From Paragordius varius (taxonomy: Eukaryota > Animalia > Nematomorpha): a stretch of 64,000 nt of DNA. The stretch is taken from NCBI GenBank assembly GCA_964247055.1, contig OZ176050.1, forward strand, positions 5,580,001 to 5,644,000. The letters are read 5' to 3'. Shown one piece after another: positions 38,899-39,536 of this stretch. The translations under genes were made by a program, and so were the position numbers. The notes under the pieces were generated by a model, which saw nothing but the letters and a program-made list of their open reading frames with translations, ran no database searches and was not told the origin of the DNA. Numbering within the stretch: the stretch's first letter is position 1; the number at the start of each line of letters is the position of its first letter.

Positions 38899-39536
38899 CT
38901 TGCATAAGGAATGTATGATAGAGCGTACCAAGTAAACGAACCAACTTGACATATGCAAAAGAGTAAGACTAAAATTTTCTTTCGCCACTTTGCTAATAAA
39001 ATAAATGTAATACCACGAATGCCGACAACAATGTGAAGATGATGCAGATCTAAAACATCAAATATTTTATTATAAAATAAATAAAAAGACAATTATAGAA
39101 GCTAACATGTATAGATCCAAAATTGCTATTATATACCAAATAGGTAACTGTGGCAATGAATCTTGTTTCTTTCATCATATTTTGCATTTGCTTTACAGGT
39201 CCAACAAGGAATAACGTACAAATATTATGATTATATATTACCTGAGAATCAGAAAAACGTTTCCCAAAGAATAAAATGCTCCAAATAACAAAAGACCTTT
39301 AGGACCGACAAATAAAATTATGCCCTATATATATACATATAAATTACAATTATGCAAAACACGATTCCAATTAACAAGCAAAAGCAAAATAATTGAATCC
39401 TTGTGCCCCAACTCAGTGAACTTTGATTAAACAATTAAATAAAACTGTATGATACTTCTTCTAAAATAGATCTTTCATCTTCAGGTTGTCCTATCCCAAC
39501 ACTTCTCCAAGCGTTTTCCCATGTATTTTTTAACAT
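38899..39536 (-). CDS. SFT2D1/2: Vesicle transport protein SFT2A/B (Got1/Sft2 family); 3' end unresolved
   Basis: Exons 39536-39456, 39431-39348, 39324-39242, 39218-39137, 39049-39014, 38987-38899 give ...[17 protein letters not shown]...[39 protein letters not shown]...[33 protein letters not shown](R). This is gap-free against the SFT2 consensus as recalled. Confidence 0.9.
39219..39241 (-). other. 23-nt non-canonical GT-TG intron (SFT2 intron 3)
   Basis: GTAATATATAATCATAATATTTG contains no AG; removal restores the conserved S-T-x-F-L-x-G-P motif. Confidence 0.75.
39432..39455 (-). other. 24-nt non-canonical GT-TG intron (SFT2 intron 1)
   Basis: GTATCATACAGTTTTATTTAATTG contains an in-frame TAA. 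The AGs at +11 and +35 give the wrong frame; TG at +24 gives EE|FNQSSLSW. Confidence 0.75.

What the first reader, a model, noticed from the sequence alone, without database searches (positions are those of the whole stretch)
39219..39455. Two non-canonical GT-TG micro-introns in an intact SFT2 gene
Seen: SFT2 intron 1 (39455-39432, GTATCATACAGTTTTATTTAATTG) and intron 3 (39241-39219, GTAATATATAATCATAATATTTG) end in TTG. No AG-ending boundary yields an open frame there. Splicing at TG gives gap-free matches to conserved motifs (EE|[11 protein letters not shown]; NVFLILS|TLFLVGP). Established: nearly all spliceosomal acceptors are AG, and TG acceptors are rare and usually minor alternatives. 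Inference: two obligatory TG acceptors in one ~150-aa housekeeping gene suggest a spliceosome with relaxed 3' splice-site chemistry for tiny introns.
Basis: partly seen in the sequence, partly recalled or inferred. Interest (0 to 1): 0.92.

Follow-up and report, generated by a model that had tools for sequence, protein, structure and literature searches.

The report
Tiny introns ending in TG
An intact vesicle-transport gene (SFT2) in this AT-rich animal genome can only be read correctly if two 23-24-base introns end in TG instead of the near-universal AG. If RNA confirms this, the animal's splicing machinery does not need AG for its tiniest introns.

Summary
Each starts GTA, ends TTG, and is as AT-rich as the gene's three AG-ending introns.

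The gene is a genuine SFT2. Exons 4 and 6 hit Pfam Got1/Sft2. All five introns sit at the positions and phases of the first five introns of tilapia SFT2A. Exons 3, 4 and 5 have identical lengths in both species (83, 82, 36 nt).

- **Intron 3:** this fixes its ends exactly. It ends in TG, and the nearest AG is 28 nt downstream and out of frame.
- **Intron 1:** it has no in-frame AG either, but its 3' end is less firmly placed (TG at 24 nt, or AA at 21 nt).
"no AG option" is too strong. A 17-nt GT-AG intron, and an 82-nt GT-AG intron with another ATG, both keep a frame. They fit the family 7-12 bits worse.

I obtained no RNA evidence, because the single read-laying run failed.

First readers of this scan flagged at least nine more 22-27-nt GT-TG introns in other genes of this genome. 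None has been checked.

Best reading (0.7): these are constitutive TG acceptors in micro-introns. In humans, TG acceptors are never an intron's only acceptor.

The parts
39456..39536 (-). SFT2 exon 1 (81 nt, ATG at 39536). It encodes the acidic N-terminal motif.
   Evidence: ORF model. The family HMM aligns from residue 12. Models that drop this exon lose 11.7 bits. It ends in phase 0, like tilapia exon 1.
39432..39455 (-). Intron 1: 24 nt, GTA...TTG, 21% G+C. It holds an in-frame TAA, so it cannot be read through.
   Evidence: No in-frame AG acceptor exists. AGs end at intron position 11 and 11 nt downstream, and both are out of frame. It is phase 0 at the position of tilapia intron 1, within one codon.
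39348..39431 (-). SFT2 exon 2 (84 nt; SLSWGTR motif and first membrane helix).
   Evidence: Alignment A1 and HMM alignment. Tilapia exon 2 is 87 nt.
39325..39347 (-). Intron 2: 23 nt, GTA...TAG, canonical micro-intron.
   Evidence: Same position and phase as tilapia intron 2.
39242..39324 (-). SFT2 exon 3 (83 nt). It ends with the first two bases (AG) of a split Ser codon.
   Evidence: Same length as tilapia exon 3. Alignment A1.
39219..39241 (-). Intron 3: 23 nt, GTA...TTG, 13% G+C, with no AG anywhere inside.
   Evidence: It is phase 2 at the same codon as a 77-nt GT..AG intron in L001 and as tilapia intron 3. The next AG is 28 nt downstream and out of frame.
39137..39218 (-). SFT2 exon 4 (82 nt; LVGPVKQ motif).
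   Evidence: Pfam Got1/Sft2 profile positions 45-71, E = 5.9e-06. Same length as tilapia exon 4.
39050..39136 (-). Intron 4: 87 nt, GT...TAG, an ordinary short intron.
   Evidence: Position and phase match tilapia intron 4.
39014..39049 (-). SFT2 exon 5 (36 nt).
   Evidence: Same length as tilapia exon 5. It fills Pfam profile positions 72-83 between the hits to exons 4 and 6.
38988..39013 (-). Intron 5: 26 nt, GTA...AAG. It passes over an internal TAG that ends at intron position 21.
   Evidence: Using the TAG at 21 would shift the frame into a stop (read). The boundary matches tilapia intron 5.
38895..38987 (-). SFT2 exon 6 (90 nt plus TAA stop at 38897-38895).
   Evidence: Pfam Got1/Sft2 profile positions 84-110, E = 2.5e-06. 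Best representative hits are 70% identical.

Best explanation
This is a working SFT2 (Got1/Sft2-family vesicle-transport) gene with five introns inherited from the animal ancestor. Four have shrunk to 23-26 nt. Two of these micro-introns (intron 1 and intron 3) have lost the AG at their 3' end and are removed at a TG.

The likely mechanism is as follows. In this genome's micro-introns there is no room for a polypyrimidine tract. The 3' cut is placed by distance from the 5' splice site or branch adenosine, not by prior recognition of an AG. The last intron base, G, is kept. It is the base that pairs with the first intron G in the second catalytic step. The base before it may be A or, less often, T.

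**Shown:**
- the gene is intact;
- the intron positions, phases and exon lengths are ancestral;
- no in-frame AG is available at either junction;
- the two segments have intron-like composition.

**Inferred:**
- the RNA is actually cut at these TGs;
- the U2-type spliceosome does the cutting;
- distance sets the site.
For: 1. **The gene is real and intact.** Exons 4 and 6 each pass Pfam's Got1/Sft2 threshold on their own and hit adjacent parts of the profile. The spliced model scores 151.9 bits against an HMM of 109 SFT2 proteins, aligned from HMM position 6 to 147 with one single-residue gap.

2. **The boundaries are ancestral.**
   - Tilapia SFT2A has CDS exon lengths 66, 87, 83, 82, 36... 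and intron phases 0, 0, 2, 0, 0.
   - This gene has 81, 84, 83, 82, 36 and phases 0, 0, 2, 0, 0.
   - An unrelated AT-rich eukaryote (L001) has a 77-nt GT..AG intron in the same split Ser codon as intron 3.
   - The G[NTS]-to-GP spacing is 11 residues in 123 of 124 family members, and only the TG model gives 11 here.

3. **Alternatives fit worse.** The 17-nt GT-AG model loses 6.6 bits, GT-AC 26 nt loses 8.8, and the alternative ATG with an 82-nt GT-AG intron loses 11.7. The 17-nt 'intron' has exon-like G+C (35%). The two TG introns have 13% and 21%, like the AG introns at 13-19%.

4. **One simple rule fits the locus.** All seven micro-introns at this locus (four in SFT2, three in the neighbouring NUFIP1-like gene) end at the first G lying 22 nt or more from the donor G. 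This includes intron 5, which passes over a TAG ending at position 21.

5. **Unchecked leads.** First-stage notes report 22-27-nt GT-TG introns in at least nine other genes of this genome: GINS1, MED18, OTC, MRPL49, ATP23, DNMT2, RNGTT, ALDH3 and one unnamed. A word search of the scan's notes matched this genome only.

6. **Chemical plausibility.** TG is the one non-AG acceptor with verified use by the human U2 spliceosome (PMC2374985). [quoted passage not shown]
Against: - There is no RNA evidence. The one read-laying run was lost to a filter. No RNA run was shown to hold the locus.
- Raw DNA reads were not checked at 39433 and 39220.
- No close relative's locus could be fetched, so conservation of the TG itself is unknown.
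- In humans, TG acceptors are never the only acceptor of an intron and need a nearby AG. Here, intron 3 has none within 28 nt.
- The 3' end of intron 1 is not uniquely fixed: TG at 24 nt or AA at 21 nt.
- The 87-nt intron 4 does not obey the 'first G from 22 nt' rule. Distance from the donor therefore cannot be the only determinant.
- My window-wide searches had no power to find further cases.
Confidence: 0.7

Rival explanations
1. This is a recently dead paralogue. The two acceptors were destroyed by A-to-T changes, the transcript is no longer spliced in frame, and another SFT2 gene does the work.
For: No expression evidence exists for this copy.
Against: - All six exons are open and score 151.9 bits against the family. 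There is no frameshift or stop, in DNA where stop triplets make up about 7% of all triplets (count).
- After a first inactivating hit, a second random substitution would have to fall on the same -2 position of another acceptor, with the same base change, before any exon damage. My rough estimate of that chance is 1% or less (inference, not computed from a model).
- Animals normally carry several SFT2 paralogues (established knowledge), so a second copy is expected.
- The same GT-TG pattern is reported in genes that are usually single-copy and essential, such as GINS1, RNGTT and MED18 (unchecked).
Confidence: 0.1
2. The gene is spliced canonically in a different way. In this reading, a 17-nt GT-AG intron (39258-39242) replaces intron 3. 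Translation starts at ATG 39522, with an 82-nt GT-AG intron (39502-39421) replacing intron 1. The product is a variant SFT2.
For: Both alternatives keep an open frame and still score 140-145 bits against the family HMM.
Against: - They lose 6.6 and 11.7 bits.
- The 17-nt version breaks the exon-length identity with tilapia, giving 66/105 nt instead of 83/82.
- It gives 13 residues where 123 of 124 relatives have 11.
- It removes exon-like sequence (35% G+C) coding hydrophobic helix residues, and keeps a 13% G+C segment as coding.
- At 17 nt it is shorter than any of the seven micro-introns at the locus, which are 22-26 nt.
- The 82-nt version discards the conserved acidic N-terminal motif.
Confidence: 0.08
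3. Assembly or base-calling error. Both acceptors are really TAG, and the T at the -2 position is wrong twice.
For: Raw reads were not inspected. The only run holding all sampled 31-mers (X1) may be the data the assembly was built from.
Against: Two identical substitution errors at the same functional position, in one 640-nt gene with no other visible defect, is improbable. Substitution errors are the rarest error class in polished long-read assemblies (established knowledge). First readers report the same pattern in at least nine other genes (unchecked). That would need a systematic TAG-to-TTG error that leaves most TAG acceptors untouched (five of seven here).
Confidence: 0.04
4. Intron 1 alone is cut at another non-AG site. 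The candidate is the AA ending at 21 nt, which would make exon 2 87 nt as in tilapia. Only intron 3 would then be a true TG intron.
For: The HMM alignment puts a one-residue gap beside junction 1. Exon 2 is 3 nt shorter than in tilapia. All in-frame excisions (21, 24, 27, 30... nt) are possible at the protein level.
Against: The length of this N-terminal stretch varies among relatives: 8 residues before LSW in L001, 6 in tilapia. The spacing is therefore not constrained. Every other intron at the locus ends in G. The terminal G is far more conserved than the -2 base in all known spliceosomal introns (established knowledge).
Confidence: 0.12

Closest known systems
TG-AG tandem alternative 3' splice sites of human U2-type introns (Szafranski et al. 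2007, PMC2374985)
   Same: A GT donor, TG as the last two intron bases, and presumably the major spliceosome. TG is the best-documented non-AG acceptor.
   Different: In humans, TG is only ever an alternative to a nearby AG and never the sole acceptor, with a distance constraint on the tandem. Intron 3 here has no AG inside it, and the next AG is 28 nt downstream and out of frame. The TG would have to be constitutive. These introns are also 23-24 nt long, far below human intron sizes.
Ultra-short (<30 nt) animal introns of myxobolid Myxozoa and Dicyema (Hadjez et al. 2026, PMC13644364; Zverkov et al. 2019, PMC6543705; Lu et al. 2019, PMC6736024)
   Same: Lengths of 22-27 nt, a 5' signal reduced to GTA, no polypyrimidine tract, conserved intron positions, and coexistence with longer introns.
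   Different: Those studies describe AG at the 3' end and rest on annotation that assumes canonical splice sites (BRAKER3 or AUGUSTUS). None mentions TG acceptors. This genome is also probably neither group. Its G+C is 27% against 36.7% in D. japonicum. An earlier follow-up found a horsehair worm as its nearest relative (not tested here).
U12-type (minor) introns
   Same: Minor introns tolerate several 3' terminal dinucleotides and choose the 3' site by distance from the branch site (my own knowledge, not checked here). Intron 1 begins GTATCA, which resembles the RTATCCTT donor.
   Different: Intron 3 begins GTAATA. Neither intron has a TCCTTAAC-like branch box 10-15 nt from the 3' end. At 23-24 nt they are far shorter than any known minor intron (sequence).
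SPF45/RBM17-dependent, U2AF-independent human short introns (Fukumura et al. 2021, PMC8363638)
   Same: This shows that short introns with a truncated pyrimidine tract can be spliced without the U2AF heterodimer, the factor that reads the AG before the first step.
   Different: Those introns are about 56 nt and still end in AG. No such factor was examined in this genome.
SFT2 / Got1 family (Pfam PF04178), vertebrate SFT2A (SFT2D1)
   Same: Domain hits, a full-length HMM alignment and shared exon structure.
   Different: The protein ends at ...PYAR, lacking the last ~13 residues and the last two introns of tilapia SFT2A.

Membership tests
SFT2/Got1 family (PF04178) | Sequence match to the family profile above the curated threshold | tested here: met
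   Exon 4 scores 27.2 bits and exon 6 scores 28.4 bits, against a cut-off of 24.6. The spliced model scores 151.9 bits against an HMM built from 109 family members.
SFT2/Got1 family (PF04178) | Orthologous exon-intron structure with animal SFT2A | tested here: met
   Five introns share positions and phases with tilapia SFT2A. Exons 3-5 have identical lengths.
Canonical U2-type GT-AG intron | GT (or GC) at the 5' end | tested here: met
   All five introns start GTA.
Canonical U2-type GT-AG intron | AG at the 3' end | tested here: not met
   Introns 1 and 3 end TTG. No in-frame AG alternative preserves the conserved protein.
Canonical U2-type GT-AG intron | Removal from the mature mRNA at the stated junctions | not testable with these tools
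No RNA run is shown to hold the locus.
Canonical U2-type GT-AG intron | Branch adenosine upstream of the 3' end | tested here: inconclusive
   Every micro-intron has an A at position 15-17 from the donor, 6-9 nt before its last G (read from the sequences). In sequence this AT-rich, that is expected by chance.
Human-type TG-AG tandem alternative acceptor | A functional AG acceptor a few nucleotides from the TG, with TG as the alternative | tested here: not met
   Intron 3 has no AG inside, and the next AG is at +28. Intron 1 has AGs 13 nt upstream and 11 nt downstream, both out of frame (frames).
U12-type (minor) intron | RTATCCTT donor and TCCTTAAC branch box near the 3' end | tested here: not met
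   Intron 1 starts GTATCATA and intron 3 starts GTAATATA. Neither has a branch box.
Animal micro-intron class (<30 nt) | Length 20-30 nt, a GTA donor, and a position conserved with other animals | tested here: met
   Lengths of 23-26 nt at ancestral positions. The neighbouring NUFIP1-like gene has introns of 22, 25 and 23 nt.
Ciliate gene (TAA/TAG = Gln) with about 25-nt introns | TAA/TAG used as sense codons, with TGA as the only stop | tested here: not met
   The family match ends at the TAA after ...PYAR. Intron 1 aligns as an intron at a conserved position. The same window carries ARMC8, matching PDB 7nsc_E. Earlier notes list animal-type genes in this genome.

The most novel reading that the evidence does not exclude
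In this animal, the 3' end of micro-introns is not defined by AG at all. The spliceosome cuts at the first G beyond a fixed minimum distance: about 22 nt from the 5' G, or about 6-9 nt past a branch A near position 16. The -2 base is then only a preference. TG serves as the sole, constitutive acceptor in a sizeable minority of 22-27-nt introns, including introns in essential single-copy genes. That would imply first-step intron recognition without U2AF35-type reading of AG. It would also mean that standard GT-AG-only annotation breaks many genes in this lineage and inflates apparent gene loss.
Probability: 0.35. Interest if true: 0.85.

Novelty: new variant of a known kind. Interest (0 to 1): 0.68.

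Why it matters
The AG at the end of an intron is among the most constant signals in eukaryotic gene expression. The only systematic study of TG acceptors found that they are never an intron's sole acceptor and depend on a neighbouring AG (PMC2374985). An animal in which housekeeping genes depend on stand-alone TG acceptors would be a natural experiment on two open questions:

- what the AG is needed for, whether early recognition by U2AF35 or geometry in the second catalytic step;
- how the 3' site is chosen when an intron is barely longer than the spliceosome's minimum span.

There is also a practical consequence. Annotation pipelines that allow only GT-AG introns, or set a minimum intron length, will truncate or lose such genes. 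Gene-loss claims for fast-evolving parasitic lineages with tiny introns would then need re-checking.

Tried and rejected
1. **Ciliate reading.** I first read the window as a Paramecium-like ciliate, where TAA codes Gln and intron 1 would be coding. I rejected this. Earlier notes and my own hits show animal genes. Intron 1 also sits at a conserved intron position.

2. **IES-type DNA excision at TA..TA.** Read, removing the TA-bounded unit of intron 3 takes out 22 nt, not 23, and gives the wrong frame.

4. **Window-wide statistics.** I tried to count non-AG micro-introns by open-frame continuity, spliced-ORF chaining and a bootstrapped codon model. All were swamped by chance open frames in this AT-rich DNA. 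Even AG showed no enrichment, so these searches say nothing either way.

5. **Two striking ORF-joining GT..TG candidates in ARMC8.**
   - 45176-45200 is better explained by a 133-nt GT-AG intron ending at a TTTTTTCAG acceptor at 45213.
   - 42599-42625 has a 75-nt GT-AG alternative.
   - No homologue was available to decide between them.

6. **Finding this species' own spliced protein, or a close relative's locus.**
   - The exhaustive search with exon 6 found nothing above 76% identity (70% for the closest loci fetched).
   - The profile search returned mostly vertebrate SFT2A.
   - Exact look-ups of four local ORFs found nothing on record.
   - The first exon of ARMC8 had no homologue in range.
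   - An exact-pattern scan of metagenome contigs found nothing.

7. I did not type the spliced 152-residue protein into any database tool, because it has no reference. A direct search with the full spliced product was therefore not done.

8. **Alignment A2**, built with a single scaffold sequence, was misaligned and not used.

Full report
**What is there.**
The window is uniformly AT-rich, at 24-33% G+C. On the minus strand, an ORF model runs from ATG 39536 to TAA 38897-38895. It has six exons of 81, 84, 83, 82, 36 and 93 nt, the last including the stop. Its five introns are 24, 23, 23, 87 and 26 nt.

Both start GTA and end TTG. The other three introns end TAG, TAG and AAG. The exons average 35% G+C and the introns 13-21%. 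The two TTG-ending segments (21% and 13%) fall in the intron range.

**Which organism and genetic code.**
I first suspected a ciliate, where TAA codes for Gln and introns of about 25 nt are normal. In that case intron 1 (24 nt, in frame, with one TAA) would simply be coding sequence. That reading fails for three reasons:
- earlier notes on this genome list animal-type genes, kb-sized introns and a class of 21-26-nt introns;
- the window itself carries ARMC8, matching PDB 7nsc_E at E = 1.7e-05, and a NUFIP1-like gene;
- the family match of the SFT2 protein ends at the TAA.

An earlier follow-up names a horsehair worm as the nearest relative it could find. I did not test this. The 27% G+C argues against Dicyema japonicum, which has 36.7%.

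**The gene is a real, intact SFT2.**
Exons 4 and 6 each pass Pfam's Got1/Sft2 threshold on their own. They hit profile positions 45-71 and 84-110, and the 12-codon exon 5 fills the 12 positions between them. When the exon translations are aligned with full-length relatives, exons 2-6 tile the family without overlap or gap. A Ser codon is split by intron 3. It aligns from HMM position 6 to 147 with a single one-residue gap in the N-terminal tail.

**The boundaries are ancestral.**
I mapped a tilapia SFT2A mRNA contig (L005) onto its gene (L004).

| | CDS exon lengths (nt) | Intron phases |
|---|---|---|
| Tilapia SFT2A | 66, 87, 83, 82, 36, 59, 30, 40 | 0, 0, 2, 0, 0, 2, 2 |
| This gene | 81, 84, 83, 82, 36, 93 | 0, 0, 2, 0, 0 |

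All tilapia introns are GT-AG. The five introns here are therefore the first five animal SFT2A introns. Exons 3, 4 and 5 have kept their exact lengths.

The closest relative in the protein libraries comes from an unidentified AT-rich eukaryote (locus L001). It also has a 77-nt GT..AG intron inside the same Ser codon, with AG before the intron and T after it. In addition, the spacing between the conserved G[NTS] and GP motifs is 11 residues in 123 of 124 family members.

For intron 3, only the excision of 39241-39219 reproduces all of these features. Its last two bases are TG. The mRNA would be identical if the cut were shifted one base upstream (GG..TT), so GT..TG is the reading closest to canonical.

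**Alternatives with AG.**

| Model | Change in HMM score (bits) | Other problems |
|---|---|---|
| 17-nt GT..AG (39258-39242), junction 3 | -6.6 | 13 residues where relatives have 11; exons 66/105 nt; removes sequence with exon-like 35% G+C; shorter than any micro-intron at the locus |
| GT..AC, 26 nt, junction 3 | -8.8 | |
| ATG 39522 + 82-nt GT..AG (39502-39421), junction 1 | -11.7 | discards the conserved acidic N-terminal motif |
| GT..TG, 42 nt, junction 1 | -11.8 | |
| GT..AC, 30 nt, junction 1 | -7.2 | |

Scores are; supporting detail is.

For junction 1, the in-frame excisions end in AA (21 nt), TG (24), TT (27), AT (30) and so on. None ends in AG. Exon 2 is 84 nt here and 87 nt in tilapia, and the HMM places its only gap beside this junction. 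The protein therefore cannot decide between TG at 24 nt and AA at 21 nt. I prefer TG because every other intron at the locus ends in G.

**Local context and a possible rule.**
The neighbouring NUFIP1-like gene has introns of 22, 25 and 23 nt, all GT..TAG. AG is therefore the majority ending and TG a minority.

Intron 5 of SFT2 is informative. It contains a perfect TAG ending at position 21, but the frame and the tilapia boundary require the AAG ending at position 26.

Across all seven micro-introns, the 3' end is the first G lying 22 nt or more from the donor G. Gs at positions 11, 12, 20 and 21 are passed over. Seven cases in G-poor sequence are weak evidence, and the 87-nt intron 4 does not obey the rule. 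Distance from the donor therefore cannot be the only determinant. Still, the pattern fits a site chosen by distance, with G as the required last base.

**What I could not get.**
There is no RNA or raw-read evidence. Six runs hold the locus, but their kind is unknown, and no RNA run is shown to hold it. This genome's contigs and close relatives appear to be absent from the protein and contig collections. My window-wide statistical surveys had no power. Two eye-catching GT..TG candidates in ARMC8 have canonical alternatives.

**Other DNA in this scan.**
First-stage notes report GT-TG introns of 22-27 nt in the following genes of this genome, and a word search of the scan's notes matched this genome only:
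- GINS1
- MED18
- OTC
- MRPL49
- ATP23
- DNMT2
- RNGTT
- ALDH3
- one unnamed gene

These are unchecked AI notes and I treat them as leads. If they hold, a pseudogene or assembly-error explanation for this locus becomes untenable. One note reports a second SFT2 gene 486 kb upstream. This keeps the pseudogene rival alive in principle.

**Weighing the explanations.**
- **Pseudogene.** This requires two identical A-to-T hits on the -2 base of two different acceptors, with no damage to 456 coding bases. I consider that unlikely (about 0.1).
- **Assembly error.** This requires the same coincidence (about 0.04).
- **Canonical alternatives.** These contradict the exon-length and spacing conservation (about 0.08).
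- **Real TG acceptors.** The remaining reading is that both introns are removed at TG (0.7).

**Comparison with what is known.**
TG is the one non-AG acceptor with verified use by the human U2 spliceosome. There, however, it is exclusively an alternative to a nearby AG and is never an intron's only acceptor. The authors conclude that AG is needed for the first step (PMC2374985). Intron 3 here has no AG within 28 nt, so it fails that definition.

Introns under 30 nt are described in myxobolid myxozoans and Dicyema. Those have a reduced GTA donor and AG at the 3' end, and were annotated with canonical-site gene finders (PMC13644364, PMC6543705, PMC6736024). I found no report of TG acceptors in those papers, nor in full-text searches.

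Some human short introns are spliced without U2AF (PMC8363638), which makes an AG-independent first step conceivable. In solved spliceosome structures, the terminal G pairs with the first intron G and the -2 A contacts the branch A. This is my own recollection and was not checked here.

**Verdict.**

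Noticed in passing
window 38988-39013 (minus strand): SFT2 intron 5 contains a perfect TAG ending at intron position 21. The frame and the tilapia exon boundary require the AAG ending at position 26, so a canonical-looking acceptor is skipped.
   Followed up: partly
window 36709-36730, 36818-36842, 36986-37008 (plus) and the four SFT2 micro-introns (minus): All seven micro-introns at this locus end at the first G lying 22 nt or more from the donor G. Gs at positions 11, 12, 20 and 21 are passed over. 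The 87-nt intron 4 does not follow this rule.
   Followed up: partly
window 39536 (minus) and 39729 (plus): SFT2 and ARMC8 are head to head with 192 nt between their start codons, so they probably share a bidirectional promoter.
   Followed up: no
window 39729 to about 47000 (plus strand): This is a long ARMC8 gene: the ORF at 44862-45080 matches PDB 7nsc_E at E = 1.7e-05. A lone in-frame TAA at 42600-42602 separates two long ORFs. It could be removed by a 27-nt GT..TG intron (42599-42625) or by a 75-nt GT..AG intron (42595-42669). This is unresolved for lack of a homologue in reach.
   Followed up: partly
window 36568-37300 (plus strand): A NUFIP1-like gene (Pfam PF10453, E = 1.6e-05, plus a C2H2-type finger exon) has three GT..TAG micro-introns of 22, 25 and 23 nt. 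It serves as a canonical local control.
   Followed up: partly
L001:1411-2046 (Logan contig of SRR19742213; also ENA ERZ1030215): An unidentified AT-rich eukaryote has an SFT2 gene with only two introns (55 and 77 nt, GT-AG). The database protein P0001 is a miscall that reads through the second intron, so its first 63 residues or so are not real protein.
   Followed up: partly
window 41622-41658: read laying refuses any stretch that includes these positions, citing a filter. Future read-laying on this window should avoid them.
   Followed up: no
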